A DNA stretch of 64,000 bases from Schmidtea nova (taxonomy: Eukaryota): contig CM097882.1 of the NCBI GenBank assembly GCA_044892505.1, positions 279,992,001-280,056,000 on the forward strand, read 5' to 3'. The position numbers were made by a program, and so were the translations under genes. Under the pieces are notes generated by a model. It worked only from the letters and a program-made list of their open reading frames with translations. It was not told where the DNA came from and ran no database searches. This document shows positions 1,720 through 61,496 of the stretch, piece after piece. Positions within the stretch are counted from its first letter, which is position 1; each line of letters starts with the position of its first letter.

Positions 1720-1847
1720 TTAATTTTATTTTATCATGAATTTATTTATAAAATTATTATTTCATTTACACCTACCTCGTCCATGGACGAGGTAGGTGTA
1801 AATGAAATAATAATTTTATAAATAAATTCATGATAAAATAAAATTAA
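1720..1847. repeat. Perfect 128-bp palindrome (64-bp arms, no loop)
   Basis: Centre is ...CACCTACCTCGTCCA|TGGACGAGGTAGGTG.... The arms match base for base from 1720 to 1847, and both ends read TTAA. Confidence 0.95.
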
Positions 1848-18209: not shown

Positions 18210-20317
18210 TAAGGTGACCAGATTTTAACATTGGTAAAACGGGACACCATTAACCGGTGACGAGGAGGGGAGGGTTGGGGGGAGGTGGTAAATAATTAAA
18301 AATTTGGTCTATTTGGAGCAATAAAAAATTTCATAGAACGCAAAATAGTATTGTAATATATTTTATTTAAATTCAACATAAGTACAATTTACAAATACAT
18401 ATAATAAATGAAAATTATAAAAAAAAATTATATATATAGCAATATTTTATTCTTTGGCATATTTCTCATTTGAGTGAATTTTTTTTAGTAGATTGTTGTC
18501 GTTGTTTAAAATGTCATGAAATTTTTCACAAGAATTTGTTAAATTATATTTCACACATAAAATGGCTTTCAAAGTCTCAACACTTAATTGTGATTTTTCT
18601 GATGTCCACACTTTATTTACCATAGAAATAACGCGTTCAGTCGCAGCATTAAATCCTGGTAAGGACAGCGCGTATTCCACAATTTTTAGTGCATTATTGT
18701 ATGGAATATAGTTTGTTTCAAAATGATGAAATATTTCTAACCATTTGTTCTCTATTGTTATTTTTTCTGATGACCAAGATTGAACCTTTTCCTTATCAAT
18801 ATATTTTTTTAATAATGATACCTCATTAAAAAGATCATTTTCGGAAATATTACTATCTGGGAAATTTTGAGTAATATGATCGAATGATTTTTGCACATCA
18901 TTCCAATTAAGTTCTTGTTTTAATGTAATCCAATGAAAATGTTCAATGTCATTGTAATGTACCGTCCACTCTTCTAAATAATCTATGCAGTTACTATAGA
19001 ACTTTTTGACGTGCTTCATGATATTTGTACGATTTATTGCACCTTGTTCTTCTAGCTGGTTTATACTATTACGGATAATTAACGGAAGAAAATTATTTTC
19101 TAACCGCTCTTGACGCAGAAATTTTAAATTATTAACTTCGTTTGCTACTTCGATTGTCGAAATTTTGTCACCTTCAATAAATTTTATAGCATTTTGAAAA
19201 AGAGCTGCTTGATTATGTACAAACTCTAGCCAAATTTTTGAAGATTCTTTTTCAAAAAAGTCTTCTAAAATTCTAGGACATTTATCCTGTGATAGAAAGT
19301 AGGATTTCAAAGGATCGTATATTTTCAAAATTCTTTCGACAGCTGGCAAAAGAGCTAACCAGCGCGTTTTACTGTATTCAAGTATTTTCTGATATTCGAC
19401 TTCCGCAGTTTCACAAAATTCTTTAGGCATTTCAACGCGCACAGTGTATATATAGAAATAAGAATATATTTTAATAACAATATTTTCCACATCTACGGAC
19501 AACAAGTCAGCAGCTGTTTGAATGGCGTTATGTATTATGTGCGCTGCACAACCAACACCAATAATGTTTTGATTAAGGTTTTTATTTAATTTATAAAATA
19601 TATTATTTATACCTCTTCTCGCTTTTCCTCCAAAATTTGCGTTCGTATTGTCTGCACAATATGCAATCATTTTATGTTTTAAATTGTTTTTTCCAAAATA
19701 TTAATAATGGAATTGAAAATTATTTCAGAAGTTTCGCCGGGCAAAGAAACGAAATCTAAAATTCTAATTTTTATTCCAGTTTCCGAATCAAAAAATCTAA
19801 TTATGGTTGGAAATAACTTTATTTCCTTATGGTTAGATGCGTCAGAATATATCGATATAAAATTAATTTTTTCTAGATTTTTGTTTAATTCTGAAAATGC
19901 ATATGGGAAAAGCACATTACACACAATTGCCTCGGATTTTGTTCTAGCACAGGCAAATTTTTTGTTGAATAACTTTTTGACAACTTGTGTACAGCCCATA
20001 GATCTGAAGGAATGATTGTGATTAATAGCATGAAAAGACATAAGTCCTTCTGCTAATGCTAATTTCTTTTCTTCGTCTCCATAAGTTGTTTTCCGAAAAA
20101 ATTCCTGTATTTTGGAGGAAGATGCAGCAGTATTTAAATATCTTTTATGTTTCTGTGTCTCCAAGTGCTTTGAAATATCATTCTTCCCGCCGTGCGAAAT
20201 AGAAAATTCACCATTACATTTCTCACATTTTACTATGTAATCGCTTTTGATTTTTTTAATAAAAGGAAATTCACTTCTTAACTCATCGTTAAATTTGCAT
20301 CCTCTTTTCTTACTCAT
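18210..20317 (-). mobile_element. hAT transposon (Blackjack-like end) with a transposase split by one frameshift
   Basis: Terminal TAAGGTGACCAGAT...CGGGACA at 18210. The ORF from ATG 20317 has a Zn finger (CEKC...SISHGG..DI.KH) and SDAS (D1). ORF 18447-19670 has CADNT (D2), CAAH, TRWL and ATERVIS (E). The join needs one extra A in the A6 run at about 19687-19692. The other TIR was not found. Confidence 0.85.
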
Positions 20318-21524
20318 TATGTAAAAATCAAAAAAAAATAATTTTAAATTAATAATTAATTTCATAAATACATAAATTTTCACAAACAGTACTCGTATTA
20401 TTTGATTTTATAGTGGCGGCAAAAAAATAATAAAAGTTAGTACTTTATAACAATCAAATTAATTTAATTTATAAACTAAAAATAAAATAATTAGTGTGAC
20501 TATAAGCAAAATTTATAATAGCACAATGATCTTAGGATCCTTGGATAAAAAGTTAATAGTAAAATGACAGTTAGAATTTTTTGTTAAATATTTTTTTCGG
20601 GAGATATCACTAATAAATTGTTTATTTTGAAGAACGAAATAATTATGTGCTTGTCGCTACACCTAAGAATGGAAAACGCATAAACCGAAAAAGTGAAATT
20701 TTCGGAAACTCGGCGATAAAGTAAAATACTTGAAAACGGCTGTGATGGTAATTTTTGTGCAATAAAAATGTTGATCTATTGTCTATGAAAAATGAAAATT
20801 TTTGAAATTGAAATAGATCTAAAGTAAAAAAACAAAAGATTCAAATAAAATTAGTATATCATAGAATATTAAAATGCATAAGAAGATAAAGACTTGGCCA
20901 GATAGAAAACTCAATAATTTAATTATTATTAGCAGAGACAAAGAAATCATATTGTGAAAGTCAAATAATTTCAAGGACAAACTAAAATATAAAATTCCAA
21001 AAAAATAAAGTAGTCAAAACAAGAACAAAAATCAACTTACTTTAGGAAGAAATTGATTGTTTACAAATGAAATATTTTCTACAGCAAATGCTTGTTGTCA
21101 AAAGTAACTATTTAGACGATAACCGAAAATAGAATCAAGCTTGTCACAAATTTTGTAGTTTAAAGTTTATTGGAATGTTAAAGTAAATTGTTAACAATAT
21201 GAATTAATTTAATACCAAATATAATAAGTGATAATAAAACAATAACTAAAAATATCTAACCTCAAAAATAATTTACATATAAACTCTTGAAATTTAGTAA
21301 AGGACGAGTAAATTTAGTTCAAAATCTTATCGATTCAAAATGACAGTGTAATTTAGTTAACGGGAAAATATACACGTTTAAAAATTAACATATGATATTA
21401 TACGACTAGTAAGAAGAATCATTCAATATTCGATTTAAATCAACAAATAATCAGGATAAAATTGTCTTCCAAGGACAGTTAGAGTAAAAACGAAAATCAG
21501 AATTCACAAACGAGACAATTATCA

Positions 21525-30200: not shown

Positions 30201-30389
30201 TTATTCTTTTTCTATTATTTTTATTAATTTTTATTATGGTCTTTATTATTATTTGTTGTGGTTATTATTATTATTATGGTTACCGTTGAGATCATGGCGT
30301 GTGTCATTGTAGACATCAGTTAACCCCTCCCCCCAATAATTTGCGTGCATTATTTTGGAAAATTTAATTGTTTTATCATTATTATTTAA

Positions 30390-30446
30390 TGTAAATTTGA
30401 ATTTGGCTTGCTATAGCAAATTGCTATAGTAAGCCAAATTACAAAT
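30390..30446. repeat. 57-nt hairpin element, copy 1
   Basis: TGTAAATTTGAATTTGGCTTGCTATAGCAA-A-TTGCTATAGTAAGCCAAATTACAAAT, identical to 38467-38523. Confidence 0.9.
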
Positions 30447-30852
30447 TAAGGAAATCGATTGTTTTAATGAACAAAAGATAGATCAGAAAATTAGAAAATT
30501 GTGTACAGAAAAAGAAATATAGAAAATTGATCAGAAATTTAAAAAGATAAAGAGAAATTGTCAAGACAAATAAAATATAATGAAAATCCTGGTGGTCATA
30601 TAAACTTTTGATTTATTTCTAGCGTTTTAGAAAAACTTTATTATTATCCCATTTGTATCCTCCAAATTTCAACAAAGAAAAACTTTCAGAACTCATTCTG
30701 AACTCCTCTGCCAAATCAACTAGAAAGAATATATTACAAGTAATTTTTCGTGGTTGTTAGTGTTTGATATAGTACCTTTTATTTACTAAATATAACTTTT
30801 GTATAATAATTTGTTTGTTGTTCGTTCTTTGTTGAATTTTATTTATATATTT

Positions 30853-31723: not shown

Positions 31724-32127
31724 TCGGTTGGGTTTCAGTAAACTTGTAAGGGGGGTACAGGGGACACGGATGTTTCTATGCACGCCCAAGGGCGTGCTAT
31801 ATAGTGAGCCATGGCTCACTAATGAAACATCCGTGCCCCCCCCTGTACCCCCCTTACAAGTTTACTGAAACCCAACCGACCGCATCTACCTTAGGTAGCC
31901 TTTAAATGAAAATATTTACTCAAGTCATTATCCAAATATCTTTATATTAAGTTAAGTAACAGTAGCTTACTCTATATAAAAAGTTATACATTACTCAAGT
32001 AATGAATCAATATATTTTACTTGAGTAATGTAAAACATATATGCTAAGTTAAGTTATAATATCTTACTTTATATAAAAAGTTATACATTACTTAAGTAAT
32101 GAATCAATATTAAATCAATGAATTCAA
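31724..32127 (+). repeat. Left ITR: complete Y-shaped hairpin (31724-31879) plus inner promoter region
   Basis: Stem TCGGTTGGG...CACGGATGTTTC pairs with GAAACATCCGTG...CCCAACCGA. Arms are GCACGCCC-AA-GGGCGTGC (31780-31797) and TAGTGAGCCATGGCTCACTA (31802-31821). The inner part has a duplicated TATATAAAAAG...CATTACTYAAGTAATGAATCAATAT block (about 97-bp period) ending at ATG 32118. Confidence 0.92.
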
Positions 32128-32789
32128 TAGCAATTTATAATGCTCTTGGGATCTTTATGGAAAAATTTGTTACTAATAATCATTTTGAGTTTAACGATGA
32201 TCATGCTAAGCTGGTTGATTCGTTGTGGGCTAAATATAATCCGTTCCCTTTTCCGGAATATAAAAGCTATGAGTATAAGCTTCTGGGAATCGCTACGATT
32301 CTTAATCTACAGGCAGGTAAGACAAAGACTATTATGTTAGAAGGTGTTTCGAATGCAGGCAAGACCACGTTTACGGCCATATGCAGAGGCAAGTTAAAAC
32401 ATGGATTTTTTACTGGAGCTCAGACAGCTAGCGAATTTGTATTTGATGACTGTGTTGACAAGCAACTTATTATTGGAGAGGAGATTTATTGTGATCATCG
32501 TAATGTTAATCTTATCAAACTTTTATGCGAGGGCAATATTTTTCTACATGTATCTCAAAAGAACAAACAAAAGACTGGTCTTCCGAAGGTTCCTGTTGTC
32601 ATTACGAATAATTATCCTATTTGGCAATTTGCTAGTGCTCATAGACAATCATTACTGAATCGTTCGTTGTATATAAAATGTGACACTCCATATTATATGG
32701 GTATCCAAGGTGATGTTTTAGATGATGTTCATAGTATAGACAGTGTTAAATATGATACTTTTAAAAAAATAGATAAATATCTTAAATAA
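32118..32789 (+). CDS. Stand-alone SF3 helicase of the parvovirus NS1 type (no HUH domain)
   Basis: Intact 223-aa ORF with Walker A EGVSNAGKT, FVFDDC, Walker B LIIGEE, motif B' KLLCEG...VSQKNK, motif C PVVITNN and an arginine-finger region LLNR. Confidence 0.88.
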   Translation: MNSIAIYNALGIFMEKFVTNNHFEFNDDHAKLVDSLWAKYNPFPFPEYKSYEYKLLGIATILNLQAGKTKTIMLEGVSNAGKTTFTAICRGKLKHGFFTGAQTASEFVFDDCVDKQLIIGEEIYCDHRNVNLIKLLCEGNIFLHVSQKNKQKTGLPKVPVVITNNYPIWQFASAHRQSLLNRSLYIKCDTPYYMGIQGDVLDDVHSIDSVKYDTFKKIDKYLK

Positions 32790-32822
32790 CTTTATTTTTA
32801 TAACATTTCAATAACAATAACG

Positions 32823-34789
32823 TTAAACCGTAACATGTGTCATTCCACTTGTTCCAAACGCGACCACCTCCGGCCGAAGGAATCTAGCAGCATTGTCTTC
32901 CATCGATGGAAAAAAGTTTTCAGTCTTTGCACTGCCATCGGCTTTGTATTTTTCGCACCATACAAACATCGGGGCATAGTAAGGAATACTAGGTACTACC
33001 CATTTAGTAGTGGGTTGCCAAGGTCTTAAAACTGCCGTATCCCATTGAGTTAGCCGTCTCGTATTTGTAGTGGGAAATGATCCAAATAACTCAATTGTAT
33101 AACTTATCTTCCACTGAAAGGTACAAGTCAAATTTATTTTGTTACGATTAGGTCCCATCATTGTGTTTAATTTAATAAATAGCATAGGCATTGGATTATG
33201 TTCACTGCATTCTTCTAAATTAGCCAAGTGCGTGTAATGATACCACATTTCACTACTTTCATCCCATTTTTTTTCTATGAGTTCGGTATGTCCATCTGTA
33301 AGTTTCTCGTGTATAGTCCTTTTTACTTGTTCGTATTGGAATTGCCTTTTTTATGATCGACAGTTTTATGTACAAATCCAAATATTTGCAATTGACTAGG
33401 ATAAGGACACTTTCTTTTGTCTTTGGTAAATGACATTCTACCAATTGAACCCAGTACTTGTCTAAATGGTTTAATCTTTCGACAACCAAAGAAATCAAAC
33501 CTATACCAGGGAATATCGGCCGTGTCTAATACTGTGTTAATATTTGTATGTTGATCTTGCCATTCTCTGATGTATCTGGGAGCATTTTTTTTTACTTGCA
33601 GTATAATCATAACTATAACTACTGTCAACGTTACAATTTATTATTTCTACTTCGGCACATGTTTCAATGATGTAATTCCATCCTGCTGGATTTAATTTTA
33701 TAGGAGTAAGTAACGCAAGACTTCCATCTAGTTTAAAACCATTATGCTAAGTTGCTTCATCTAACCACATATCTTTGAATGATTTTGCACCATCGGGGGG
33801 TTCACGCAAGGTCAAAATAAATATTTATCGTCCTTGTACACTAAAAACTTCACCTGTTGTTGTAAGCCATTGAAATTATTGGCGCTAGTTTCCCCGATAA
33901 CCTGTATATTAACGATTTCGTAGTGCATATCAATGGGTTTCCACCAAAGGTACCGGTTAATTGCCGACCAAAAGTCCGGATTTGAAGCCATAATATGAGG
34001 ATAAGGGTACTCGAGATTGATATTGTACCACTCATTGATCTCGGTAGTTTGAATGCATGAGGCCCCACAGTTGGTGGTGGTAAAAGATATTCTATTTCCT
34101 TCGAGAGTCGGTCGGTGGTCTCCCTGAGATCCACGTAAAATTCCTCCTCCGCCTCCTGAACTACTTGTTCCTGCACCAGTTGGTGCTGGGGTTGTAGGCG
34201 CTGCTGCCATTTCATTAAGAGCTTGTGTAACTGTATTAATGCCTTTATGTTTCCTGACTTCGTTATTATATACATCTATATGTTCATTGACAACTGACCA
34301 ATGATCGTGGACTACGACATCATCTCTATTTCCATAGGCTTTATATAATTTTTTTTCGTATGCTAGCATGTCAGCCGTGTAAGCCGCACTCCATATACCA
34401 TGTGTCGGAGATTTATCGTGATTATACTGCCTTAAGTAATTTAAAACTCTCCCTCTTTGTACTGTTTGGAAATGATTATTTTTAACTTTATATTCTTCGT
34501 GTTTGATTTTATGTAAGAACTTTTCAAATTTTTCGTGTAAGTGACCGGTAGTATGAAACTCTTTTTTGATAATAGGCTTATCAGTAGGTAAACTTCTTTT
34601 TACCCTATCGGGAACTTCTGGAATTAAATCATCTGTATCCGGATCAGCATAGTCGTGATTTAATTTAAAAACTTTGTTTTCGACTATGCCATCTAGACTT
34701 TCTAATTGTCTCATAGTATTACCGATTGCTTGTTGAATCCTCTGTATAGGACTTAAATCTGGTCTTCTTTGGAAAAAATACGCATACAT
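32823..34789 (-). pseudogene. Parvovirus/densovirus-like capsid gene (about 650 aa reconstructed), three frameshifts and one stop
   Basis: A Gly-rich linker (GAGTSSSGGGGG) precedes a beta-rich region (..RYLWWKPIDMHYEIVNIQV..). The late PMPMLFIKL...TFQWKISYTIEL segment resembles parvovirus VP. The pieces join with single-base changes in homopolymers at about 33815 (T4), 33590 (A9) and 33350 (A6). There is an in-frame TAG at 33747-33749. A minus-strand AATAAA lies at 32791-32796. Confidence 0.72.
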
Positions 34790-34847
34790 CCATTTGTTCC
34801 TTTGTATTAGTTCCGGTAAGAATTTGAACCATTTCCACCACTAATGT

Positions 34848-35762
34848 TTAATAATTTCTTCGTCTGTGTATTTGTTTTTTTTCGAATATTTTAGATATAT
34901 CATTCAAATCGGTCTGGTCCATCCATCTTTTAATTATATCTTTCGCGTACTTCTGATATTTTTGAGAATTATTAATATACCTATCTAGTTCTTTGTGCTC
35001 ATCTAAATACCTAGAATGTAGTGTATACTGGTCTTGTTTATTATATAGAAATAACTCCCGCAAGTCTACTTTTTTATATAGTTCCTCTAGGTGAAAAACA
35101 TCAATTAAATCTTCAGAATTTACATAATCAAAAAAAGCTTTCTCGTCTTTACTATATTCAAACATAAATTCTTTAGTACTGTTATATTTGCCTCCTTTTA
35201 CATTTTGTAAAGCTATCATAATAATAACACTAACAGTCTGCCCTATAACTGCACCTCGACGAGTTGCAAAACGTCCCAATGAATTGAAGGTAGGTTTACC
35301 GTAATTACGTAATGCATAATTCAAGGTTCGACTATTAAATTTCCAATTTAGGCCCATAGTATTAAATACGTCACTTCTGATGGACTTTAAACTGTTACTC
35401 ATTAATAAATCATGATATGGGTTAGACCTTAATTTATTTTCCAGCGAACTAATACTTTTTATAATTGTAGGTTTAATAGTAGTGCTATAAATTTTATACA
35501 TAAATGTTAAAGAATCATAATACCAATTCTGATCAACTTTTTTAATATCCCTACCACCACTTAAGAACTTAACAATAGACGTTGAATATTCTAAATTTTG
35601 AACATAATTCTTCATGGCCCTTCGTTCCTCTGGTGTAAGAGTATGACTATTTATTAAACCTAATTTACTTTCTATGACATTCTTTAACTCAAAAACAAAT
35701 ATAATTAAATTACCAATTACTTCTTCTTCTGTGGTTTTCCCTCTAAGATATCTAATATTCAT
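34848..35762 (-). CDS. Orphan 304-aa viral ORF upstream of the capsid gene
   Basis: Uninterrupted ATG-to-stop ORF inside the ITR-bounded element, with a basic C-terminus (KKQIHRRRNY). No motif recognised. Confidence 0.7.
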   Translation of the reverse strand: MNIRYLRGKTTEEEVIGNLIIFVFELKNVIESKLGLINSHTLTPEERRAMKNYVQNLEYSTSIVKFLSGGRDIKKVDQNWYYDSLTFMYKIYSTTIKPTIIKSISSLENKLRSNPYHDLLMSNSLKSIRSDVFNTMGLNWKFNSRTLNYALRNYGKPTFNSLGRFATRRGAVIGQTVSVIIMIALQNVKGGKYNSTKEFMFEYSKDEKAFFDYVNSEDLIDVFHLEELYKKVDLRELFLYNKQDQYTLHSRYLDEHKELDRYINNSQKYQKYAKDIIKRWMDQTDLNDISKIFEKKQIHRRRNY

Positions 35763-35780
35763 TATAAGGTCTTTGTCACT

Positions 35781-36344
35781 ATGGAACCTTTTGGTCCGAT
35801 CAGAAGTTTGACCATATATTATGTCTTGTTAAAGGCACTGTTCATCAATTTGATTGATAGGTATCGAAAATTTTTTAGGTTTATTATTTTTATCCAGTCT
35901 GATATCTGTACTAGTTCCAGGACCACAAAAGAGGGACAAGATCGGTGCACAGTGTGCATAGTATTCCGCAACGCACTTCGCACTCTACGATCGATGAAGT
36001 CAGAGAGAACCTTGACAAGTATAGGGAAATGGAAGCTTGTCAATTGGTGGCAAAGATTAATAATGACTCTGCTGCCGCAATGGGAAATATGTCAAACAAT
36101 ACGAACGATAATATTTTCCGAAAACGTTTCTACCTATGGTCCTTTAATATCGGCGTCTCCTTTTTTAAGCAACACGAAGAAATACTTCGAGGATTATGGA
36201 GTGATCCTAAGATCACAAAGTTCTTTACAGGACAGGAGGAGATTGGGGATAATGGTTTCCGACATCTGCAATGTATGCTGGAGACTGTCAGAAATTATAC
36301 AATCTCGGCTGTCCGAGCCCAGTTCAAAATACCTTTGTCAGTAG
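35781..36344 (+). CDS. Possible overlapping accessory ORF (187 aa) in an alternative frame over the Rep 5' end
   Basis: ATG-initiated and long for AT-rich DNA. Starts 18 bp from the divergent ORF at 35762. No recognised motif. Confidence 0.35.
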   Translation: MEPFGPIRSLTIYYVLLKALFINLIDRYRKFFRFIIFIQSDICTSSRTTKEGQDRCTVCIVFRNALRTLRSMKSERTLTSIGKWKLVNWWQRLIMTLLPQWEICQTIRTIIFSENVSTYGPLISASPFLSNTKKYFEDYGVILRSQSSLQDRRRLGIMVSDICNVCWRLSEIIQSRLSEPSSKYLCQ

Positions 36345-37204
36345 CATCCGGCTACTGAGCGAGCAGCAGTCTTCCAATATGCGACAAAATCAGAGACCCG
36401 ACAGCCAAATGGACTTTCAATCTTATATGGTGAACAGAGTAAGAAATTTTCTGAAAATAATTTTAAATCAGCTCTTAACTGTACATCTTATTCTGAGGCA
36501 ATACAAATTATTAAAGACAAAGAGCCTTTTCATTATATTACAAAACGGAAAGTAATAATAGAAAGTTTATTGAATGAATAGGGCAGGCCTACAATGCCTA
36601 ATTTTAATAATTTTACTATCAATCCAGTTAATATTTACGACATGCCTAGTCATGTATTTCTTGGTCCGACTGGCATTGGAAAGACAAACTTCGCATTGAG
36701 CCATTTCACATGCCCAGTTCATGCAAAACATATGCAATTACTAGGCAGAATCAGTTCAGATACAACGAAAACAGATAGCATCGTTTTTGATGATCTTTAT
36801 TTCAATAAATTTAGCTCCTCAGAATTTTTAAGCTTAGTAGATTTAGCTTTTGACAATTGCATTAATATCAAATACTCAGTAGCTATAATACCAAAATGCA
36901 TGTCTCGAATATTTTGCATCAATACATTTGATAATTTTTTCCCTGACAATATATCTCCAGAAATACAAAAAGCTATTAATAGTCGCATTGTAATTCACCA
37001 TTTTACTGAAAAGCTATATAGTGAATATATAAATGAAAATGAAGTATTTTTTATATTACTACTTAATAACCTTGTTTTTAGGTGATAGAAAATCCATACC
37101 GGAATACGAACCAGCTGTTCAGGAGTTTTCTAGAGGAAGCGGAAACAGGAGCTTCTCCAGTGTTACCTGTAGATATTGCGGACGAGCTGTTCGAATCTTC
37201 ATAG
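36029..37204 (+). pseudogene. rep: CRESS-DNA/circovirus-like Rep (HUH endonuclease plus SF3 helicase), interrupted
   Basis: Motif I FYLWSFN and motif II GQEEIGDNGFRHLQCML. After a +1 shift at about 36350, motif III VFQYATKSETR. In-frame TAG at 36579-36581, then Walker A FLGPTGIGKT, Walker B IVFDD, IKY..AIIP..RIFCIN and AINSR. A possible 38-nt intron (37044-37081) adds an acidic tail ending at TAG 37202-37204. Confidence 0.85.
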
Positions 37205-37288
37205 GAGTCTGTGACACTACATTTTAATTTGAACAGTTAACATTGTGATTTGTTTCGTATTAACTTAGTTCTCAATTAAACATTGTTG

Positions 37289-37539
37289 TTGAATTCATTT
37301 ATTTAATATTGATTCATTACTTGAGTAATGTATAACTTTTTATACAGAGTAAGCTACTGTTACTTAACTTAATATAAAGATATTTGGATAATGACTTGAG
37401 TAAATATTTTCATTTAAAGGCTACCTAAGCTAGCTGCGGTCGGTTGGGTTTCAGTAAACTTGTAAGGGGGGTACAGGGGGGGGCACGGATGTTTCTATGC
37501 ACGCCCATGGGCTATATAGTGCTATATAGTGAGCCATGG
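37289..37539 (-). repeat. Right ITR, truncated and rearranged within the hairpin
   Basis: Reverse complement of the left inner region and stem (few mismatches), then GCACGCCCATGGGC-TATATAGTGC-TATATAGTGAGCCATGG, broken at 37539. Confidence 0.92.
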
Positions 37540-37800
37540 TTGCAATTACAAAATAATAAAACAAAACAATTATTATCAATTCAATTATTAGCACAATAAA
37601 CGCTTTAACAGTACAACTATACCAGATTACTTTAGCTTTTATCTACAGAAATCTTCGGAGGAACTGAGTTTCTACAGTCCTCTAACTCAATTTCAATGTC
37701 TGTACAGTGTTTGCTTCAAAGGTTAAAAATAATAATATCGGATTCAGAAATTGGATCCTTTCGAGGTATGTGTAAGGCCAATAAACGAATACAAGGTTGA

Positions 37801-37990
37801 TAATAATAATATCGGATTCTGAAATTTTATTCGTATTCTGAAATCTGATTCGGATTCCGAATTTGGATTCTCTCGATATATTTGTAGAGGTGATAAATGA
37901 ATACCAAATTAATGATAATAATATCGGATTCTGAAATTTTATTCGTATTCTGAAATCTGATTCGGATTCCGAATTTGGATTCTTTCGATA
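37801..37990. repeat. Tandem duplication of about 115 bp
   Basis: ATAATATCGGATTCTGAAATTTTATTCGTATTCTGAAATCTGATTCGGATTCCGAATTTGGATTC occurs twice. Confidence 0.85.
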
Positions 37991-38090
37991 TATTTTTAGG
38001 TCCAGTAAACGTATAAAAGTTAATTATAATACTTATAACCGAATTATTTTCAGGTAATTAATTTTTAAATTCTAAATCAATTTTTTTAAT

Positions 38091-38119: not shown

Positions 38120-38466
38120 TGTTGGATTGAATTTAAAATTTAAAATTTTTAATAATTCAAAATAATAGTAAAAAATGGTAATAATAATAATAGAAGTAAT
38201 CCCCTAACACAATGCGCCTAATTAATGATAAAAGGGGGGGTTCCGGTATACACAATACCAAACACAATAAAAATAATAAAAGACCATGCCAATTATTCCT
38301 ATACACAACAATATATATGTGTGTGTGTGTAGTGTTCAGGAATGAATGGAAATGGTTGTTATTCTTATTATTATGGATGGTATTTTAGTACAAACCCCCC
38401 CCCCCAATCATTTGTATGTATTGTAATTTTTATTATAATTATAATTTTGTTTATGGTGATTTAAAT

Positions 38467-38523
38467 TGTAAATTTGAATTTGGCTTGCTATAGCAAATTG
38501 CTATAGTAAGCCAAATTACAAAT
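38467..38523. repeat. 57-nt hairpin element, copy 2
   Basis: Identical to 30390-30446. About 60 bp downstream of a C11 tract (38395-38405). Confidence 0.9.
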
Positions 38524-39120
38524 AAAAAAGTTATTGATCGAATTTATGAAATTTGATTGTTAAGAAAATATTTATACCCAAAAGAAAATCAACTAAATTG
38601 GATTCAGAATACAGAGAAATTAAAAGAAAATAACTGAAGAGAAGATTACTGTAACTGAATCTAATTAGAAAGTGATATTATCTTAACAGACGTTAATTAA
38701 AAAGGAAGATTATTGCAACTGAATTTAATTAAAAAGAATACGATCCAGATTAGAAAACTCGAATTTAATTATAAAGAAAACGATCCAGAATAAAACTCGA
38801 ATTTAATTATAAAGAAAACAATTTTTAACCCTTCTAACAATCTAACACGTGAGTACGTGTTTATAAAGTTTTTTTGAAGTTATTATTGTTTCTTAATAAT
38901 AAAAGTTTTTATTACTGTTGTCGGTTCATTTGTTGTTAGCATTCACAAATAAGCACGCACCAGACACACAAGAATATAAACATACACCCCGAGTGTCTCC
39001 ACACAGTTTTCGGAAGACTCTCTCGAGCTCTATAACTTCTCCCACACAACATCATTCTATCACACAATACACATCCATCCTCGACATCAAATTAAACAGA
39101 AAACCATTACAAAAGTAAAC

Positions 39121-39123
<3 letters not shown>

Positions 39124-39193
<70 letters not shown>
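39124..39193. repeat. (TA)n microsatellite
   Basis: Direct reading. Confidence 0.97.
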
Positions 39194-45518: not shown

Positions 45519-48500
45519 TTAGTGCCAATTCCTCCAAGCGCAATACATTCTCGCCGTCCAATTTAGTACTTTCAGAGATATGAGCATGGCATCTGACTGC
45601 GTGACACCGAATTTCTGTACGGTGTCCCATGAATCCTCGGCCCAGATACCCTGCCAGTTCAGCGTTAACGCACCGAACTCTACCGTATCTGCCCCCTGCT
45701 CAAGGACCCAGTCACGTATCTCAATCTCATCATATACCTTGGACTTTGATATATTTCGTTCTCTCAGATCTGACTTGTCACTAACAATTTGTACATCCAC
45801 GACCATAGCACGGCGGTCCTTGATAATTACTAAATCCGGTTTCCGTATAGTCTCTTTATACGGTATAACCGGTTCCACAAGGGTCTTCCACCCCTTCTTC
45901 TTCGCGATGTCAGCTGTAAAAAGCATCACTTTATTGTGTCGTTCCACTCGCATCCCATGCGAAGCAGTGCACTTTTGTGATATGTGGCTAAGACTGCAGG
46001 GTAACCCACAGCCCGCCTTACATATAGATGATGAAGTGGCGGAGCCGCCATTCATACGACTAAGTCGCGTCGGGGTACTAAAAAGGTTTCCACGAACTTT
46101 GACACTGTTAACGAAGGATCTACCTGTCATCAACTTAGTCCGGGCCTTAAGCCAGTTATGAACAAAAGGCACCTCGTCGCTTCCACACAGACCCTTCCCA
46201 TCTAGCTTTGTATACAACAAGTCTCGCATCGACTCGTAATAGGTATGTTTTTCGTACGCCAGGGAGTCACCAGTTTTAATATGCTTACTCCATTTGGCTA
46301 ACAAGTTTCTGACGACATCCTGCTCCACTAATCCGCGAATCCTTCCATCACTGCTATCGGCAAGCCTCTTCAATCTAGTTATCTTCGCAAACTTCACCTC
46401 AGCTTAGAGAGTAGGTACCCCCATTCCTCCATCTTTAACTTTGGAGTGAATGTATGAAAAGCACGTATCTTTGGGTAGATGTAGCCATTTACGAACAAGC
46501 ATCCGGGTTATCTTGTCCAGTTCATAAAGCTCCAAGTCATCAGTTTCGCCTAAAATTGCTTCGTGCAAAATGCCCGGTATAAGGAAGTTAGTTAAGACTT
46601 CCAGTTTTTGTTGTGGTTTAATAGGGGAGATAGTAATATTGTTAATGCGTTCTGTATATATTTTAGTTAAGTTATTTTTCATTTTACCCAGCGGACCAAA
46701 ATAAATGCCTAAATATTTATAAAAATCATTTGATAACAAAATGGGAAATTCCTCTTCACCATCGGCCACTCGCTCCGGAGTTATTATCCAACTGTCACTC
46801 TTCCCGTCTCTTTTGGCTACAATGGACGCCCACTTTGCAGCATTCACTGAAAGACCATTTTCACCAAGTTCTCGAAGAACAGAAGAAAGAATGTCTTGGA
46901 GTCCTTCTTTGGTCTCAGCTAGCAGGATTATATCATCAGCGTAGGCCATAATGGGATAGGTATTTCCATTCATCTTGTATCCGAGTTGGGTTTTGTAGGC
47001 TTTCTCAATCGCCAACTCAATAATATTATTAAAAAGTGCGGGTGAAAGCGGGTCCCCTTGCTTTACACCTCTTTTGAACGTAGCTGGCGTTCCATCTACA
47101 ATAGTCTCGGCGTCAGTATAGCTATTTTCTATATAATTTAATAGTAGTTTGGGGTAATGGGCTATTTTTGCCGCTCTTAAAATACTTTCATGATTGACAG
47201 AGTCAAAAGCTTTCTTCATATCAATGAAAGCCAGGGCAATATTCTTTTTATTTTTACGTGCATCAGAGAGGATAGAGTCTAGTAAAATAGTATTCTCTAA
47301 ACATCCATCGATGGGCTTAAACCCTTTTTGGGCTGAAAAACTTTTATCATAGTTTAGGGTTCGCTGAGCGAGAATTTTATTTAAAACTCTAGTTATAACT
47401 GAATTTATTGAAATAAGCCGATAATCACTTGGACTTTTTTGATTTTCGGTCTTTGGTATTAGCGTTGTTCTGGAGCTCTTTAGAACCGGAGGAAGATAAC
47501 CTAGATAAATAACCAAATTAAATAACTTTACCAATACAGACGTCGGGATCGTCCTTAGTGTTGCAGTAGTAATGCCATCAGGACCACAGGCAGTCTTCAG
47601 GTCTATTTCCTTAACTGAATTCAGAACCTCTGAATCGGTTATAGGTAAGACCATATTACTCTCCTCAGTTACAGTCTCTACAGCTCTTGTATCAGCATCT
47701 GATTCCCTTTCGAAAACCCCACGCCAATACTCACCCAGACCCGTAACTGGTTCGATACCACTCACCAAAGAATCGACCTTCCCCCCGAGTATCACTTTGG
47801 CTGCCTCACTTCTGTCTTTTTTGAATAGTTCTTGGAGAGCTCCATATGTTTTTCTTCGGAACTCTTTCTTCAGATGCTTCTTCGCATCCTTGGACGGCTT
47901 GACTAGTGGGCTAACCTTACTACGGGGTGGCTTTCCTTTGGGACGATGGCTAAAGGTTATATCATTACAATATATCTCTAGACATCTTCTTTTTTCATCA
48001 GACGCAGAAGGACCGTGGATAATATAGTCAAGGTCGCGCTCTTGACAATCATCAATACCTTCCTTCTTTGGTAGTGCGGAGAGGTATTTAATGATTGCTT
48101 CTTTGTCCGATTCATCGTGGGCGAACTGAACCTGCTGCTTGTTTTGCGATATGCAAATATTGTCGTCAGGGTTTTCCCTTAACACTTGTAATATTTTGCA
48201 ATACCTAACCGTTTTCAAGTGTGCTCTAATGGACTCCTTGGAGCGATCAGCACTAACGGTCCCTAATTTGTACATCAAAACTCCCCTATTACACTCGAGT
48301 CTCTCACATGCCATATGCACCTTAGCCATGCGGACCTTCTCCTCAACAGTCCAAATTGCGTTACGCGAGTTGATTTTATTTTTATTTATTTTATTTATCT
48401 TAGCGGCATCGTGTTTATCACGATGTTTATTACTGGTGTGTACCTCCTTCCCAATTTTAGTCGGAAAAATCGCTTCACAAAAATCACAAGCGAAAGTGTC

Positions 48501-48545
48501 GGCGGCTTCCTCTCCCTTCGTTATTGATTTTTTATTAGGTTTCAT
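45519..48545 (-). mobile_element. R2-clade non-LTR retrotransposon ORF (about 1008 aa) with one in-frame stop
   Basis: One C2H2 finger (CDFC...H....H) and a Myb domain (RNAIWTVEEK). RT motifs include QKGF...GC, AFIDMKKAFDSV, GVKQGDPLSP and YADD. TAA at 46404-46406 stays in frame with the C-terminal CxxC..HxxxxC, RHN, KPDL, VVDV and K..Y restriction-like endonuclease. Confidence 0.92.
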
Positions 48546-49021
48546 TTTTCATGGATTTGTTTTTAAGGGAGTGTTTTACAGTAGGACACCCTCCCTTGGT
48601 AATGTCTCACCGTCCTAAAATTAACCTACATAGATACCTTACCTAGTTCTTTAGTGGTGGTGGTCGTATATGATCTTATTCTTAAACATTATTATTATTT
48701 TCCTAGCATGAAAGCCCACATACAATCAGTAGTTTGTTGTATGTGGGCTTTCGTGTTAGCATGCTCCCTGTTACCAGAGCATTATTATAAAAGATATATA
48801 CAATATACAATATAACTACATATTTAAAAGTCTGTGCAAAATGCCCACATAGTACCCCTTGGGGCACTATGTGGGCAATTATACATTACAACTTTTATAC
48901 ACAAATGAGAATTTACAAATACAAATTGGTGGGGAGGACATACTGGGCCAGTCCTCTCCTTATATAGTACCAAGTTAATGACTACATATATATACTTAAA
49001 TACCTGAATACTAATTTACTT

Positions 49022-49238
49022 CAAATACCTAAAATACCTCAAATACCTAAAATACCTAAAATACCTAAAATACCTAAAATCCCTAAAATCCCTAAAATCC
49101 CTAAAATCCCTAAAATCCCTAAAATCCCTAAAATCCCTAAAATACCTAAAATACCTAAAATACCTAAAATACCTAAAATACCTAAAATACCTAAAATACC
49201 TAAAATACCTAAAATACCTAAAATACCTAAAATACCTA
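49022..49238. repeat. 9-bp tandem repeat (AAAATACCT, with an internal AAAATCCCT block), about 24 copies
   Basis: Direct reading. Confidence 0.95.
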
Positions 49239-50131: not shown

Positions 50132-50770
50132 AATCAGTGGTATGTTTCGCCCACCAACTGACAAACACTTAGAATTTTAACTATATAGCTAGGCTATATA
50201 TTACAATATCATTTTATAGTGAGAATTGACACCACTTATATAACCAACATCGAGCCAACATCGAGTTTATTAAGCAACTAGGCCACTTAAAACAATTCCT
50301 TTGGTAGTGAGAATTGACATCACCGTATACAGGACCGACAATCAAGTGTCGACGACAAGACCTGCATACATCCGGGCCCTTATCAGTAATCAGCAGTATG
50401 TTTCACCCACCAACTACCAAACGTCCCGTATTTTTACTATATAGCTAGGCTATATATTACAATATCATTTTATAGTGAGAATTGCCACCACTTATATAAC
50501 CAACATCGAGCCAACATCGAGTTTATTAAGCAACTAGGCCACTTAAAACAATTCCTTTGGTAGTGAGAATTGACATCACCGTATACAGGACCGACAATCA
50601 AGTGTCGACGACAAGACCTGCATACATCCGGGCCCTTATCAGTAATCAGCAGTATGTTTCACCCACCAACTACCAAACGTCCCGTATTTTTACTATATAG
50701 CTAGGCTATATAGAACAATATCATTTTATAGTGAGAATTGCCAACACTTATATAACCAACATCGAACCAA
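50132..50770. repeat. 256-bp tandem repeat, about 2.5 copies
   Basis: AATCAGYRGTATGTTTC.CCCACC starts at 50132, 50388 and 50644. Later copies are nearly identical. Recurrent TAGTGAGAATTG motif. Confidence 0.92.
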
Positions 50771-51537: not shown

Positions 51538-52006
51538 TTAGTCCGTGCCAGTTCTAAGTTGACCGTTTAGTGTACAACGACGATCATCAATCCGAAGACC
51601 AACAACCAAAGCAAAATTTGCCCATCAACCAGTTAAAAAAGTACCATCTCAACACCATTTCAAGTTGCCTCAAAACAGCATCAAAACAGCTCAATTCTAT
51701 ACCAACTGACTTCTTAACTAAGCCCATCATACCCGGTCCTTAGAGCCAATCCTTTTACCGAAGGTACGGATCTAANNNNNNNNNNNNNNNNNNNNNNNNN
51801 NNNNNNNNNNNNNNNNNNNNNNNNNNNNNNNNNNNNNNNNNNNNNNNNNNNNNNNNNNNNNNNNNNNNNNNNNNNNNNNNNNNNNNNNNNNNNNNNNNNN
51901 NNNNNNNNNNNNNNNNNNNNNNNNNNNNNNNNNNNNNNNNNNNNNNNTTATATCCGAATTATTGTTATTCAATTGATCACAATGAGATGTGTCATAAATC
52001 AATGAA
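51538..52006 (-). rRNA. 28S rDNA fragment (D7a-D8 region), pseudogenic, copy 1; contains a 172-nt N run
   Basis: The reverse complement reads TTAGATCCGTACCTTCGGTAAAAGGATTGGCTCTAAGG...AACTTAGAACTGGCACGGAC, matching conserved LSU rRNA sequence on each side of D8. Confidence 0.82.
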
Positions 52007-59430: not shown

Positions 59431-61496
59431 CAGGCCTGGCCAACCCAAATCGCTCTGCGGGCCAACTTTTTTTTCCAAAATTTTATGCGGGCTATATAAT
59501 ATACGAAAACCCCAATTTTTATTGAAATATTTGTTTGAATTATTTCAGTACATAGATTTATTTGAACCATTCCAAGAAAAACATCTATTTTTATATTTAC
59601 ACTAGATTTTTTTTATTGTTTCAAGAACATTCTTATTGAACCATTTATTTTTATTATTTCACTACACTTAAGAATAATATTTATTAATGAGATGTTTGCT
59701 TTTCTTTGCGATCGCTCAATGCTTTTAAATCTACATCAATTTGGGTAGTTGCACATCGTAATTGGCTTTCAAGGTTTTCGTCTGTTAATGAAGCGCGAAA
59801 TTTACTTTTGGTAAATTTCATTTTTGAAAAAAAGGCTTCACAAACATATGTAGATCCGAAGGCGCTTACAATTTTTTGAGCGAATAATCTTAAGTTAGGA
59901 TACCTTTCTGCTGTTATATACGTGTTGTAGAATTAGATTTTTGATGTCGTCTTATGAACCTGCTTCAACTCATTGTTACACTGCAAATTAATTATTTCCA
60001 TCTGTAAAGCTTCTGGAACAGTGAAAGCGTCAACTTGAAATGGTGAAGAAAATATCTCAAACGTTTTGTCATATTTTGTAAGTTCTGAGAAACGACGAGT
60101 AAATGCAGCTGAAAGTTTTATAATTTCATCAGCGTACTTTGCAAAATTAATAGCTTGACTGCTATTAAATTCTTTTAATAATGGAAAATGGTGAAGATTG
60201 TTATTTCAAAGTTGGGACTCAAATAAAATTAGCTTGGTTTGGAATGCTTTGATATGATTACAAGCATCAATAATTAAATTATCTTGCCCCTGTAACTCCT
60301 TGTTTAGCTGGTTAATTTTTTCGGTTATATCTACTAAAAAACACAGGTCCAACAACCACATATCGTCATTTAAATTTGAAACTGGAGTTCTCTCTTCAGC
60401 CATAAAATTTTCTATTTCCACCCGTAATTCAAAAAATCTTTTTAAACATGTTCCGCGACTCAACCATCTAACTTTGGTAAAATAGACAATATCGCCGTAT
60501 TTCGAACTTAATTCGTCAAGGTATGCTCTGAACTTGCGATGCTGAAGCGCATGTGATCGAATATAGCTAACTGTTTTTATTACCACATCCATGACATGGT
60601 TCATGGACAATACCTGGGCACATAAATTTTGCTGATGTATCAAACAGTGTATTACAAATATTTCACTGGGTTTAACAGATGTAGCTTCAAGTTCATCCAT
60701 AAACAACTTTACGGTTCCTTTATTTTTACCAATCATAGCAGGCGCACCATCCGTTGTTAGTCCAGAAAGCTTCTCTAAATGTAAAGAATTACAGGATAAA
60801 CATTTTTTTATAGCGTGGAAAACATCCTCTCCTCTAGTGGTGTCTTTCAAATTTAAAAGATTTAACATTTCTTGTGTCACTCCGAAAGAATCGTTAACTC
60901 CACGAATAAATACAGCAAGTTGTGATGTATCTGAAATATCTGTACTTTCGTCGAAAGCTAGAGAATATGCTTTGAATTGTTGAATCCGCTCTCGTAAAGT
61001 CACCACTATTTCATCCGAAATATCATTAATGCGACGACAAATAGTTTGACGCGACAAACTTATGCACGAAATCATTTTATGTTTATCTGGCATAACATCT
61101 TCTATAACAGCTGCCAAACATTCTTTTACAAATTCTCCGTCCGAAAATGGTTTCATTTTCTTAGCGATTAACATTGCGACAGAGTAGCTTGCTTTAACAA
61201 TATTAGAAGGTAGTTGTAATGAAGAACTAAACATTTTCTGCTGAGATTTTAATTCGGATTTTAGCTCGGCCAATTTAATATTTCTCAATTCACTATTAAA
61301 TTTCACACACGTCGTGTTTCGTTTCATGATGTCTTTTAACATTGTATTCCTTAAAAACAGCTATTGTATCTCGGTAAATCAAACATGTTAATTTTGAGTT
61401 CTGCATTATAAAGAAATAATTTTCTTCCCAATGATCGCTGTATTTTCTGTTTTCTTCTGAAACTCTTCTTTTTTTGGAATTCATTCTAAAGGCCAT
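59431..61496 (-). mobile_element. hAT transposon (SPIN/Charlie, GTF2IRD2-like transposase), frameshifted
   Basis: Terminal CAGGCCTGGCCAAC...GCGGGCC at 59431. Pieces: KKRRVSEENRKY...W..YFF..CLI...KRHHETKH; SLAFDESTDISD, TTDGAPAM, HCLIHQ, VRWLSRG; and the C-terminal FGSTYVCEAFFSKM. The other TIR was not found. Confidence 0.88.

What the first reader, a model, noticed from the sequence alone, without database searches (positions are those of the whole stretch)
32118..32789. Intact NS1-type helicase with no nuclease domain, driven from the ITR promoter
Seen: the ATG lies directly after the ITR TATA block, the ITR homology runs into its first codons, and there is no room for an upstream HUH domain. 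It is undamaged, whereas Rep and capsid are disrupted. Established: AAV Rep52/40 are nuclease-less SF3 helicases that act as packaging motors. Inference: there is a division of labour, with the CRESS Rep initiating replication and this ORF packaging the genome. A CRESS Rep could have replaced the ancestral NS1 nuclease while the capsid-adapted motor was kept.
Basis: partly seen in the sequence, partly recalled or inferred. Interest (0 to 1): 0.75.

Follow-up and report, generated by a model that had tools for sequence, protein, structure and literature searches.

The report
Stand-alone helicase of planarian-type virus-like element
The open reading frame is a real, intact helicase gene without a nuclease part. 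It belongs to an integrated, partly decayed virus-like element of a kind already described in planarians, so the architecture is genuine but not new, and a packaging role is only a guess.

Summary
Window 32118-32789 (+) is an intact 223-codon ORF encoding a parvovirus-NS1-type SF3 helicase (Pfam Parvo_NS1 E 2.4e-12). Its AlphaFold model (pLDDT 88) matches AAV2 Rep40 best. The ATG lies 38 nt after a TATA-like block inside a 418-nt terminal inverted repeat, and the repeat homology covers the first 8 codons. An in-frame stop 18 nt upstream leaves no room for a nuclease domain.

This copy is not a deletion product. The three best relatives among 1.84 billion proteins are 222-244 aa and align end to end. 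One is the named stand-alone helicase of the planarian virus-like element PEVE. A 2011 paper reports integrated relatives (PIVE, Repbase) in Schmidtea mediterranea.

The 5.8-kb element (31724-37539) also carries a broken Rep-like gene. It has an HUQ motif and its own Walker A/B/C set, but no database search confirmed it. No search identified the "capsid".

At least 6 breaks lie in 4.5 kb of coding sequence, so an unbroken 0.67-kb ORF is expected about 40% of the time. Intactness is therefore no evidence of selection. The division-of-labour and packaging-motor idea is plausible but untested.

Verdict: new member of a known, poorly studied kind.

The parts
31724..37539 (.). Whole integrated virus-like element (5816 bp, 34.6% G+C), single copy in the window
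   Evidence: Bounded by terminal inverted repeats. No second copy in the window. Flanks carry host-type transposon ORFs.
31724..32141 (.). Left terminal inverted repeat (418 nt), with an internal 97-nt tandem duplication (31943-32013 / 32040-32110)
   Evidence: 190 nt 98% complementary to 37306-37495 and 102 nt 86% complementary to 37275-37376. BLAST confirmation.
31724..31879 (.). Complete terminal hairpin: a long stem with two small arms (Y/T shape)
   Evidence: DNA fold -77.7 kcal/mol. Shuffles average -21.0, z -19.3, 0 of 200 as good.
32070..32079 (+). TATA-like block inside the repeat, 38 nt before the ATG (second copy at 31973-31982)
   Evidence: Read directly from the sequence. Promoter function is inferred, not tested.
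32118..32789 (+). Intact stand-alone SF3 helicase gene (223 aa): N-terminal helical bundle (res. 1-62), AAA+ core (res. 70-188) and a short conserved C-terminal tail
   Evidence: AlphaFold model pLDDT 88.3, pTM 0.85. Foldseek best match AAV2 Rep40, E 3.4e-10, TM 0.59. Parvoviridae NS1 proteins are best in BFVD.
32343..32366 (+). Walker A (res. 76-83, GxxxxGKT)
   Evidence: G76, G81 and K82 are invariant or >=90% conserved in alignments A1 and A2.
32469..32483 (+). Walker B (res. 118-122, ending in EE)
   Evidence: E122 is invariant in 67 sequences and aligns with the Rep40 Walker B.
32595..32612 (+). Motif C / sensor 1 (res. 160-165, ending in N165). The arginine-finger candidate R182 lies at 32661-32663.
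   Evidence: N165 and R182 are >=90% conserved in A2.
32823..34789 (-). Its longest open piece is 325 aa and carries a glycine-rich tract. Identity is not established.
   Evidence: At least 4 breaks (stops and/or frame changes) are needed to read it from first to last base. Pfam, PDB and the word search gave no significant hit. The only hint is a sub-threshold match (E 0.63) to a 60-chain 'VP2' entry, 9n5m.
34848..35762 (-). Intact 304-aa ORF of unknown function
   Evidence: No Pfam hit above noise. 0 breaks.
35763..36079 (.). Spacer between the divergent 304-aa ORF and the Rep-like gene. It may hold internal promoters.
   Evidence: Read. A candidate stem-loop at 35925-36000 is not better than shuffles (z -0.56).
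36080..37085 (+). Rep-like gene, broken. A GxE...HUQ motif and a Y..K motif are followed by a separate Walker A/B/C P-loop domain. The size (about 330 codons) and motif spacing are those of CRESS-type Reps.
   Evidence: Three-frame translations. P-loop triad found in 0 of 2000 shuffles, HUQ motif in 46 of 2000. At least 2 breaks, namely at least one frame change and one stop. No Pfam, PDB or word-search hit for its pieces. Not a paralogue of the NS1-type ORF. The start codon is my inference.
37275..37539 (.). Right terminal inverted repeat. Its terminal hairpin is truncated at the junction with host DNA. It carries the same TATA block and ATG on the minus strand.

Best explanation
The ORF is the stand-alone SF3 helicase gene of an integrated, partly decayed virus-like element of the PEVE/PIVE type. 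These are planarian extrachromosomal or integrated virus-like elements.

In this family the roughly 225-aa NS1/E1-like helicase is a separate gene by design. Rolling-hairpin or rolling-circle initiation would fall to a second gene, a circovirus-like HUH Rep with its own helicase domain.

The gene starts inside the terminal inverted repeat. It is most likely transcribed from the TATA-bearing promoter that the repeat carries, as in ambisense densoviruses (own knowledge).

The protein most likely forms a ring-shaped, ATP-driven single-strand DNA translocase that works on the element's hairpin-ended linear DNA alongside the Rep. Its catalytic motifs are all in place.

Whether its task is unwinding during replication and terminal resolution, or pumping DNA into a particle as AAV Rep52/40 do, is not settled. 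I lean slightly towards a Rep40-like accessory or packaging role, because the Rep brings its own helicase.

Shown: the ORF, fold, motifs, repeats, same-size relatives and the named PEVE relative. Inferred: promoter use, oligomeric state, partnership with Rep and any packaging role.

In this copy the partner genes are broken and one hairpin is truncated. The ORF is therefore probably a still-intact remnant rather than a working or domesticated gene.
For: - Intact ORF far beyond chance.
- Parvo_NS1 above Pfam's cut-off.
- Confident model with Rep40, B19V NS1 and papillomavirus E1 as best folds.
- Parvoviridae NS1 and stand-alone bidnavirus NS proteins among the best viral folds.
- The top three of 352 relatives are 222-244 aa and align over residues 6-221.
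- These relatives contain only helicase domains.
- Liu et al. 2011 report PIVE integrated in Schmidtea mediterranea and group PIVE_1p with the PEVE small segment and the parvoviruses.
- Terminal repeats and hairpin.
- Rep-like gene with an HUQ motif plus a P-loop triad, unrelated to the NS1-type ORF.
- AT-rich, transposon-rich animal-type flanks.
Against: - Identity to the PEVE helicase is only 28-30%, and to the best relative 33-34%.
- The host was not identified. None of the window's ORFs is in the protein collection.
- The genomic context of the relatives was not examined, so co-occurrence of helicase, Rep and repeats in relatives rests on the PEVE literature. The original paper is not held, so its content is from my memory.
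- No search confirms the Rep-like gene as a CRESS Rep, or the minus-strand gene as a capsid.
- There are no expression data.
- Many short database relatives sit on short contigs and could be fragments.
Confidence: 0.75

Rival explanations
1. One reading: strict division of labour. The CRESS-type Rep nicks and replicates. The NS1-type helicase is a dedicated packaging motor kept because it fits a parvovirus-type capsid.
For: - The best structural neighbours are AAV2 Rep40 assemblies, including an entry titled as a Rep40 pentamer on an AAV8 capsid (9rwg).
- The Rep-like gene has its own P-loop helicase domain, which makes a second replicative helicase look redundant.
- Hairpin termini are parvovirus-like.
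- A glycine-rich tract and a sub-threshold VP2 match occur in the minus-strand gene.
Against: - No capsid gene could be identified.
- Likeness to Rep40 is shared by all NS1 and E1 helicases, which are replicative.
- There is no functional or expression evidence.
- In bidnaviruses a stand-alone NS1-derived helicase exists beside a different replication enzyme, with no packaging role demonstrated (PMC4061559).
Confidence: 0.25
2. This copy is a deletion product of a full-length NS1 that lost its HUH domain on or after integration.
For: More distant relatives are long NS1 proteins with 200-500 residues ahead of the helicase: 58 of 155 have more than 200 extra N-terminal residues.
Against: - The closest relatives have the same length and the same N-terminus, with a shared N-terminal helical region.
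- One of them is the annotated helicase of an extrachromosomal element.
- The ATG and first codons lie inside the terminal repeat and recur in the right repeat.
Confidence: 0.04
3. The helicase has been domesticated by the host. It is kept intact by selection while the rest of the element decays.
For: The ORF is intact with all catalytic residues, while the Rep-like and structural genes are broken.
Against: - Two other element ORFs (304 aa and 325 aa) are also open.
- With at least 6 breaks in 4.5 kb, an unbroken 0.67-kb stretch has P of about 0.4.
- The best-kept parts of the repeats are still 98% alike, suggesting a fairly recent insertion.
- The exact protein is absent from 15 billion catalogued proteins.
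- No orthologous copies were available for dN/dS.
Confidence: 0.06
4. The mature protein gains an HUH domain by splicing to another exon.
For: None found. Splicing cannot be excluded without transcript data.
Against: - An in-frame stop lies 18 nt upstream.
- Only 238 nt of repeat sequence without an ORF lie between the hairpin and the ATG.
- The only HUH-like coding stretch lies 3.9 kb downstream on the same strand.
- Relatives of the same length begin at the same point.
Confidence: 0.03

Closest known systems
[quoted passage not shown] 2002, BMC Genomics 3:15)
   Same: - Stand-alone helicase of nearly the same length (227 vs 223 aa), aligned end to end, E 8.9e-20.
- Same Pfam domains.
- From my memory of the paper: inverted repeats flank the unique regions, and a second, circovirus-Rep-like helicase gene is present.
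   Different: - Only 28-30% identity.
- PEVE is extrachromosomal and described with a large and a small unique region. The helicase record is 1911 nt.
- The element here is a single 5.8-kb unit integrated in a chromosome, with broken genes.
- PEVE DNA was not fetched, so the layouts were not compared.
PIVE, integrated virus-like element of Schmidtea mediterranea (Repbase Reports 2008; discussed by Liu et al. 2011, PMC3198968)
   Same: - Integrated in a planarian genome.
- NS1-like ORF (PIVE_1p) that groups with the PEVE small segment and the parvoviruses.
- The window's AT-rich, transposon-rich flanks fit such a host.
   Different: Repbase is not available here, so I cannot say whether the window's element is PIVE itself or a relative. 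The host of the window is not identified.
AAV Rep52/Rep40
   Same: - Nuclease-less SF3 helicase with an N-terminal helical bundle plus an AAA+ core.
- Best sequence and fold match among solved structures.
   Different: - Rep52/40 are nested products of the rep gene, made from an internal promoter. They share every residue with the large Reps (own knowledge).
- Here the helicase is a separate gene. It is unrelated in sequence to the helicase domain of the element's Rep-like gene.
- About 20% identity.
Bidnaviridae NS1 (Bombyx mori bidensovirus VD1 ORF2)
   Same: - Stand-alone S3H derived from parvoviral NS1, with the rolling-circle endonuclease domain lost and another replication protein taking over initiation (PMC4061559).
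- Bidnavirus NS proteins appear among the fold matches.
   Different: - Bidnaviruses use a protein-primed PolB, and their terminal repeats do not form hairpins (PMC4061559).
- Here there is no PolB, a true terminal hairpin and an HUH Rep-like gene.
Ambisense densoviruses (Parvoviridae)
   Same: Linear genome with long inverted terminal repeats that end in Y/T-shaped hairpins and carry TATA promoters just outside the first gene. Genes lie on both strands (own knowledge; the anatomy here is).
   Different: - Densovirus NS1 has both HUH and SF3 in one protein.
- Here the helicase stands alone and the HUH lies in a separate, CRESS-sized gene.
- The right-repeat promoter here faces the antisense of that gene.
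Parvo-like hybrid viruses (PHV / NIH-CQV)
   Same: Described as hybrids of a circovirus-like Rep and a parvovirus-like capsid (own knowledge; the group is discussed in PMC13141889).
   Different: No separate NS1-type helicase is known to me in that group. No comparison was made here.

Membership tests
SF3 helicases of the parvovirus NS1 type (Pfam PF01057) | Profile match above the curated cut-off | tested here: met
   46.9 bits vs cut-off 20, E 2.4e-12
SF3 helicases of the parvovirus NS1 type (Pfam PF01057) | Walker A, Walker B, B' lysine, motif C asparagine, arginine finger | tested here: met
   G76, G81, K82, E122, K148, N165 and R182 sit on invariant or >=90% conserved columns. They align with the Rep40 motifs.
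SF3 helicases of the parvovirus NS1 type (Pfam PF01057) | Rep40-like fold (helical bundle plus AAA+ core) | tested here: met
   Model pLDDT 88.3. Foldseek match to 9rm5 Rep40, E 3.4e-10, TM 0.59.
PEVE/PIVE-type planarian virus-like elements | Stand-alone helicase of about 225 aa, homologous over its full length to the PEVE helicase | tested here: met
   P0003, 227 aa, E 8.9e-20, aligned over residues 14-199 by HMMER and end to end in A1
PEVE/PIVE-type planarian virus-like elements | Second gene: circovirus-like Rep (HUH plus own helicase) | tested here: inconclusive
   Motifs and spacing are present, but Pfam, PDB and the word search were blank for its pieces. The gene is broken.
PEVE/PIVE-type planarian virus-like elements | Unique region(s) flanked by inverted repeats | tested here: met
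   418-nt and 265-nt terminal inverted repeats
PEVE/PIVE-type planarian virus-like elements | Planarian host | not testable with these tools
   Flanks are AT-rich, with hAT and RT transposon ORFs. None of the ORFs is in the protein collection. No eukaryotic genome collection is on hand.
AAV Rep52/40-type packaging helicase | Helicase-only protein lacking the origin-binding/nuclease domain | tested here: met
AAV Rep52/40-type packaging helicase | Nested in, and co-linear with, the large Rep gene (internal promoter) | tested here: not met
   It is a separate gene 3.3 kb from the Rep-like gene, with no similarity to that gene's helicase domain.
AAV Rep52/40-type packaging helicase | Docks on the capsid and drives genome packaging | not testable with these tools
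   No capsid was identified. There are no functional data.
Parvoviridae | NS1 with HUH nuclease and SF3 helicase in one protein | tested here: not met
   In-frame stop 18 nt upstream and no upstream ORF. Same-size relatives.
Parvoviridae | Hairpin telomeres on a linear genome of 4-6 kb | tested here: met
   5.8-kb element with a Y/T-shaped terminal hairpin
Parvoviridae | Jelly-roll VP capsid gene | tested here: inconclusive
   Only a glycine-rich tract and an E 0.63 match to a VP2 chain. Pfam and the word search were blank.
CRESS-DNA viruses (Cressdnaviricota) | Circular genome with a nonanucleotide-bearing stem-loop origin | tested here: not met
   The element is linear with terminal repeats. 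The candidate stem-loop between the divergent genes is not better than shuffles. The origin-motif pattern is not enriched in the window: 28 matches vs 21 expected.
Bidnaviridae | Protein-primed PolB beside the stand-alone S3H | tested here: not met
   No polymerase domain in any ORF of the element

The most novel reading that the evidence does not exclude
The element may be a natural hybrid between the two great lineages of eukaryotic ssDNA viruses. It would have a hairpin-ended, parvovirus-style linear genome whose initiator is a CRESS-type Rep. Its NS1-derived helicase, stripped of its nuclease, would survive as a dedicated motor for a parvovirus-type capsid. If so, it would be a living example of initiator replacement with motor retention, parallel to the origin of bidnaviruses.
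Probability: 0.15. Interest if true: 0.7.

Novelty: new member of a known kind. Interest (0 to 1): 0.35.

Why it matters
PEVE-type elements are among the least studied animal ssDNA virus-like elements. They carry two unrelated SF3 helicases, one inside a circovirus-like Rep and one NS1/E1-like and free-standing.

A well-bounded integrated copy shows the anatomy of the family in one piece: complete Y/T-shaped terminal hairpin, promoter-bearing repeats, helicase, two unknown minus-strand genes and a Rep-like gene. It links that anatomy to parvovirus-style termini.

It also gives a second natural case, beside bidnaviruses, in which an NS1-type helicase persists without its nuclease next to a foreign replication initiator. 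That bears on how modules are exchanged between Cressdnaviricota and Parvoviridae. For this particular ORF, however, nothing shows that it is active or selected.

Tried and rejected
- The word-index protein search gave no hit for any of three queries: the helicase ORF, the longest open piece of the Rep-like gene and the longest open piece of the structural-gene candidate.
- PDB sequence searches of the Rep-like and structural pieces found nothing significant.
- Pfam on nine other ORFs or pieces of the element found nothing above noise.
- An AlphaFold model of the Rep-like P-loop piece, made without an alignment, had pLDDT 33. It is unusable and was not searched.
- I looked for a CRESS-type origin. 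The candidate stem-loop between the divergent genes is not better than shuffles, and the origin-motif pattern is not enriched.
- Pfam does not recognise the nuclease domains of the long NS1 relatives either. Its silence on HUH in the short relatives is therefore not the argument. Their length and aligned N-termini are.
- Exact look-up of eight window ORFs to identify the host found none in the collection.
- Names of ten further short relatives were uninformative, and most sit on short contigs.
- The original PEVE paper could not be read.
- I rejected 'selection keeps the helicase intact' as an inference from intactness alone.
Full report
**1. The observation**

The window holds one ORF at 32118-32789 on the + strand: 223 codons, ATG start, no internal stop. 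Given the element's composition (34.6% G+C, stop probability 0.068 per codon), 223 open codons have a chance of about 1.4e-7. In 300 shuffles of the element the longest ATG-ORF averaged 78 aa, with a maximum of 142.

The protein matches Pfam Parvo_NS1 at 46.9 bits (cut-off 20, E 2.4e-12) over residues 57-169. Among solved structures it matches AAV2 Rep40/Rep68 and B19V NS1 by sequence (E 8e-6 to 3e-4). Walker A (res. 76-83), Walker B (118-122), the B' lysine K148, motif C N165 and R182 are all in place.

**2. The element around it**

The ORF sits in a 5.8-kb element (31724-37539) bounded by terminal inverted repeats.
- The left repeat is 31724-32141. The right repeat is 37275-37539.
- The best-kept 190 nt of the two arms are 98% complementary. 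The inner 102 nt are 86% complementary.
- The left end is a complete 156-nt palindrome. It folds into a long stem with two small arms (-77.7 kcal/mol, z -19.3).
- The right hairpin is cut short at the host junction.
- Repeat homology runs to 32141, so the ATG and the first 8 codons of the helicase lie inside the repeat.
- A TATA-like block (32070-32079) lies 38 nt before the ATG. A 97-nt tandem duplication gives a second copy upstream, in the left repeat only.
- An in-frame TGA lies 18 nt upstream of the ATG. No + strand ORF of 40 aa or more lies between the hairpin and the ATG.

Use of the repeat as a promoter is inferred from position.

The rest of the window is AT-rich and full of transposon-type ORFs (hAT dimerisation domain, reverse transcriptase, DUF4371). 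The element is thus integrated in an animal-type genome. Nothing suggested a human contig. The four N runs were left untouched.

**3. Is it a deletion product?**

The word-index search, which sees only proteins of 123-390 aa, found nothing. The claim depends on the architecture of relatives of any length, so I ran the exhaustive search over 1.84 billion representatives.
- It gave 352 hits at E <= 1e-3.
- The three best are P0001 (244 aa, E 2.5e-29), P0002 (222 aa, 1.9e-24) and P0003 (227 aa, 8.9e-20).
- They align with the query from about residue 6-16 to residue 199-221. They therefore share its N-terminus, its N-terminal helical region and its C-terminal tail.
- Pfam finds only helicase domains in them.
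- More distant hits are typical long NS1 proteins with the helicase in the middle. One example is P0014, 817 aa, named as a chapparvovirus non-structural protein. Of 155 proteins, 58 carry more than 200 residues ahead of the helicase and 39 carry 40 or fewer.
- Pfam does not recognise the nuclease domains of these long relatives either. The argument therefore rests on length and aligned termini, not on Pfam's silence.

The helicase-only form is native.

**4. What family it belongs to**

[quoted passage not shown] This is PEVE, the extrachromosomal virus-like element of the planarian Girardia tigrina (Rebrikov et al. 2002).

The paper itself is not held. From memory, it describes a genome of about 7.5 kb with two unique regions flanked by inverted repeats. 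It also describes two helicase-like genes, one a homologue of circoviral Rep and one like the papillomavirus E1 helicase.

Liu et al. 2011 (PMC3198968) make three relevant statements:
- The Schmidtea mediterranea genome holds numerous parvovirus-NS-like sequences, annotated in Repbase (2008) as the integrated element PIVE.
- PIVE is closest to PEVE.
- PIVE_1p and the PEVE small segment cluster with parvoviruses.

The window's element fits this kind. It may even be PIVE itself. I could not compare, because Repbase is not on hand and the host is unidentified.

**5. Structure**

An AlphaFold model built on 67 aligned relatives is confident (pLDDT 88.3, pTM 0.85). It shows three N-terminal helices, an AAA+ core and a less certain tail.

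Foldseek against the PDB puts AAV2 Rep40 assemblies first (9rm5, E 3.4e-10, TM 0.59). These include an entry titled as a Rep40 pentamer on an AAV8 capsid (9rwg). B19V NS1 and papillomavirus E1 follow.

Against predicted viral structures the best matches are Parvoviridae NS1 proteins. Also listed are an unnamed 227-aa protein (Q91S73, 28% identity) and stand-alone bidnavirus NS proteins.

**6. The other genes**

On the + strand near the right end lies a Rep-like gene (about 36080-37085).
- One frame shows a GxE...HUQ motif.
- A Y..K motif follows about 40 residues later, in another frame.
- Further on lies a complete Walker A / Walker B / motif C set.
- The P-loop triad occurs in 0 of 2000 shuffles of the element. 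The HUQ motif occurs in 46 of 2000.
- The size (about 330 codons) and the motif spacing are those of CRESS-type Reps (own knowledge).
- Pfam, PDB and the word search gave nothing for its pieces. The assignment is therefore motif-level only.
- The gene is not a paralogue of the NS1-type helicase.
- It is broken. At least two breaks (at least one frame change and one stop) are needed to read it through.

On the minus strand lie an intact 304-aa ORF of unknown function (34848-35762) and a structural-gene candidate (32823-34789).
- The candidate's longest open piece is 325 aa and has a glycine-rich tract.
- At least four breaks are needed to read the whole candidate.
- Its only hint of capsid identity is a sub-threshold match (E 0.63) to a 60-chain 'VP2' entry.
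- I treat 'capsid' as unverified.
- Introns could explain some frame changes. No tool here predicts introns, so I tested no splice model and joined no pieces.

**7. Does intactness mean selection?**

There are at least 6 breaks in 4548 nt of coding sequence, or 1.3 per kb. The expected number in the 669-nt helicase is therefore 0.88, and the chance of none is about 0.41 (simple Poisson, my inference). Two other ORFs are open as well. The contrast 'helicase intact, Rep and capsid broken' is real but says little.

**8. Mechanism**

The most likely reading is that the ORF is the free-standing SF3 helicase gene of a PEVE/PIVE-type element, transcribed from the promoter in the terminal repeat. Its product would be a ring-forming, ATP-driven ssDNA translocase acting on the hairpin-ended DNA together with the HUH Rep.

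The Rep brings its own helicase domain. The evidence fits a replicative or hairpin-resolving role equally well. I give the packaging reading about 0.25.

The nearest evolutionary parallel is in bidnaviruses. There the NS1-derived S3H is a stand-alone protein, the endonuclease domain was lost, and a PolB took over (PMC4061559).

**10. Verdict**

The finding is a new member of a known but poorly studied kind, possibly the known PIVE itself. Interest is moderate (0.35).

Noticed in passing
window 31943-32013 and 32040-32110: A 97-nt tandem duplication (89% alike) of the TATA-bearing part of the left terminal repeat. The right repeat has one copy. The left end therefore carries two promoter-like blocks ahead of the helicase.
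   Followed up: partly
window 37275-37346 (minus strand): The right repeat carries the same TATA block, ATG and about 8 codons as the helicase start. There the reading frame closes at once, and the promoter-like block points into the antisense of the Rep-like gene. It is about 1.5 kb from the nearest minus-strand gene.
   Followed up: partly
window 37440-37539: The right terminal hairpin is truncated at the junction with host DNA, while the left one is complete. This asymmetry is expected for an integrated copy.
   Followed up: partly
window 34848-35762 (-): An intact 304-aa ORF with no recognisable family. It is divergent from the Rep-like gene across a 317-nt spacer.
   Followed up: partly
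window 35925-36000: The spacer between the divergent genes contains a 9-nt stretch that differs by one base from a match to the origin nonanucleotide pattern. It sits in the loop of a weak predicted stem, but the fold is not better than shuffles (z -0.56).
   Followed up: yes
window 30322-30449 and 38393-38526: A 128-135-nt repeat (82% alike, direct orientation) lies on both sides of the element, about 1.3 kb and 0.85 kb away. Each copy has a 60-nt near-palindromic core (98% alike). It looks like a miniature transposon.
   Followed up: no
window 37738-38031 and 39124-39193: A 112-nt tandem array (2.6 copies) lies directly to the right of the element, and a perfect (TA)35 tract lies further on.
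   Followed up: no
window 18447-20383 (-), 46404-48545 (-), 51987-54914 (+), 60206-61342 (-): Host transposon-type ORFs: a hAT dimerisation domain, a reverse transcriptase, a 975-aa ORF with a weak Endonuclease VII match and an internal 18/27-nt coding repeat, and a DUF4371 ORF. None is in the protein collection as an exact sequence.
   Followed up: partly
window 1-2000: Strong G-over-C skew (0.43) and higher G+C (43.5%) than the rest of the window, with a 30-nt G/T-rich tandem repeat at 278-372.
   Followed up: no
window 50132-50770 and 48998-49238: A 256-nt tandem repeat (2.5 copies, 95% matches) and a 9-nt microsatellite of 27 copies lie next to the reverse-transcriptase ORF.
   Followed up: no
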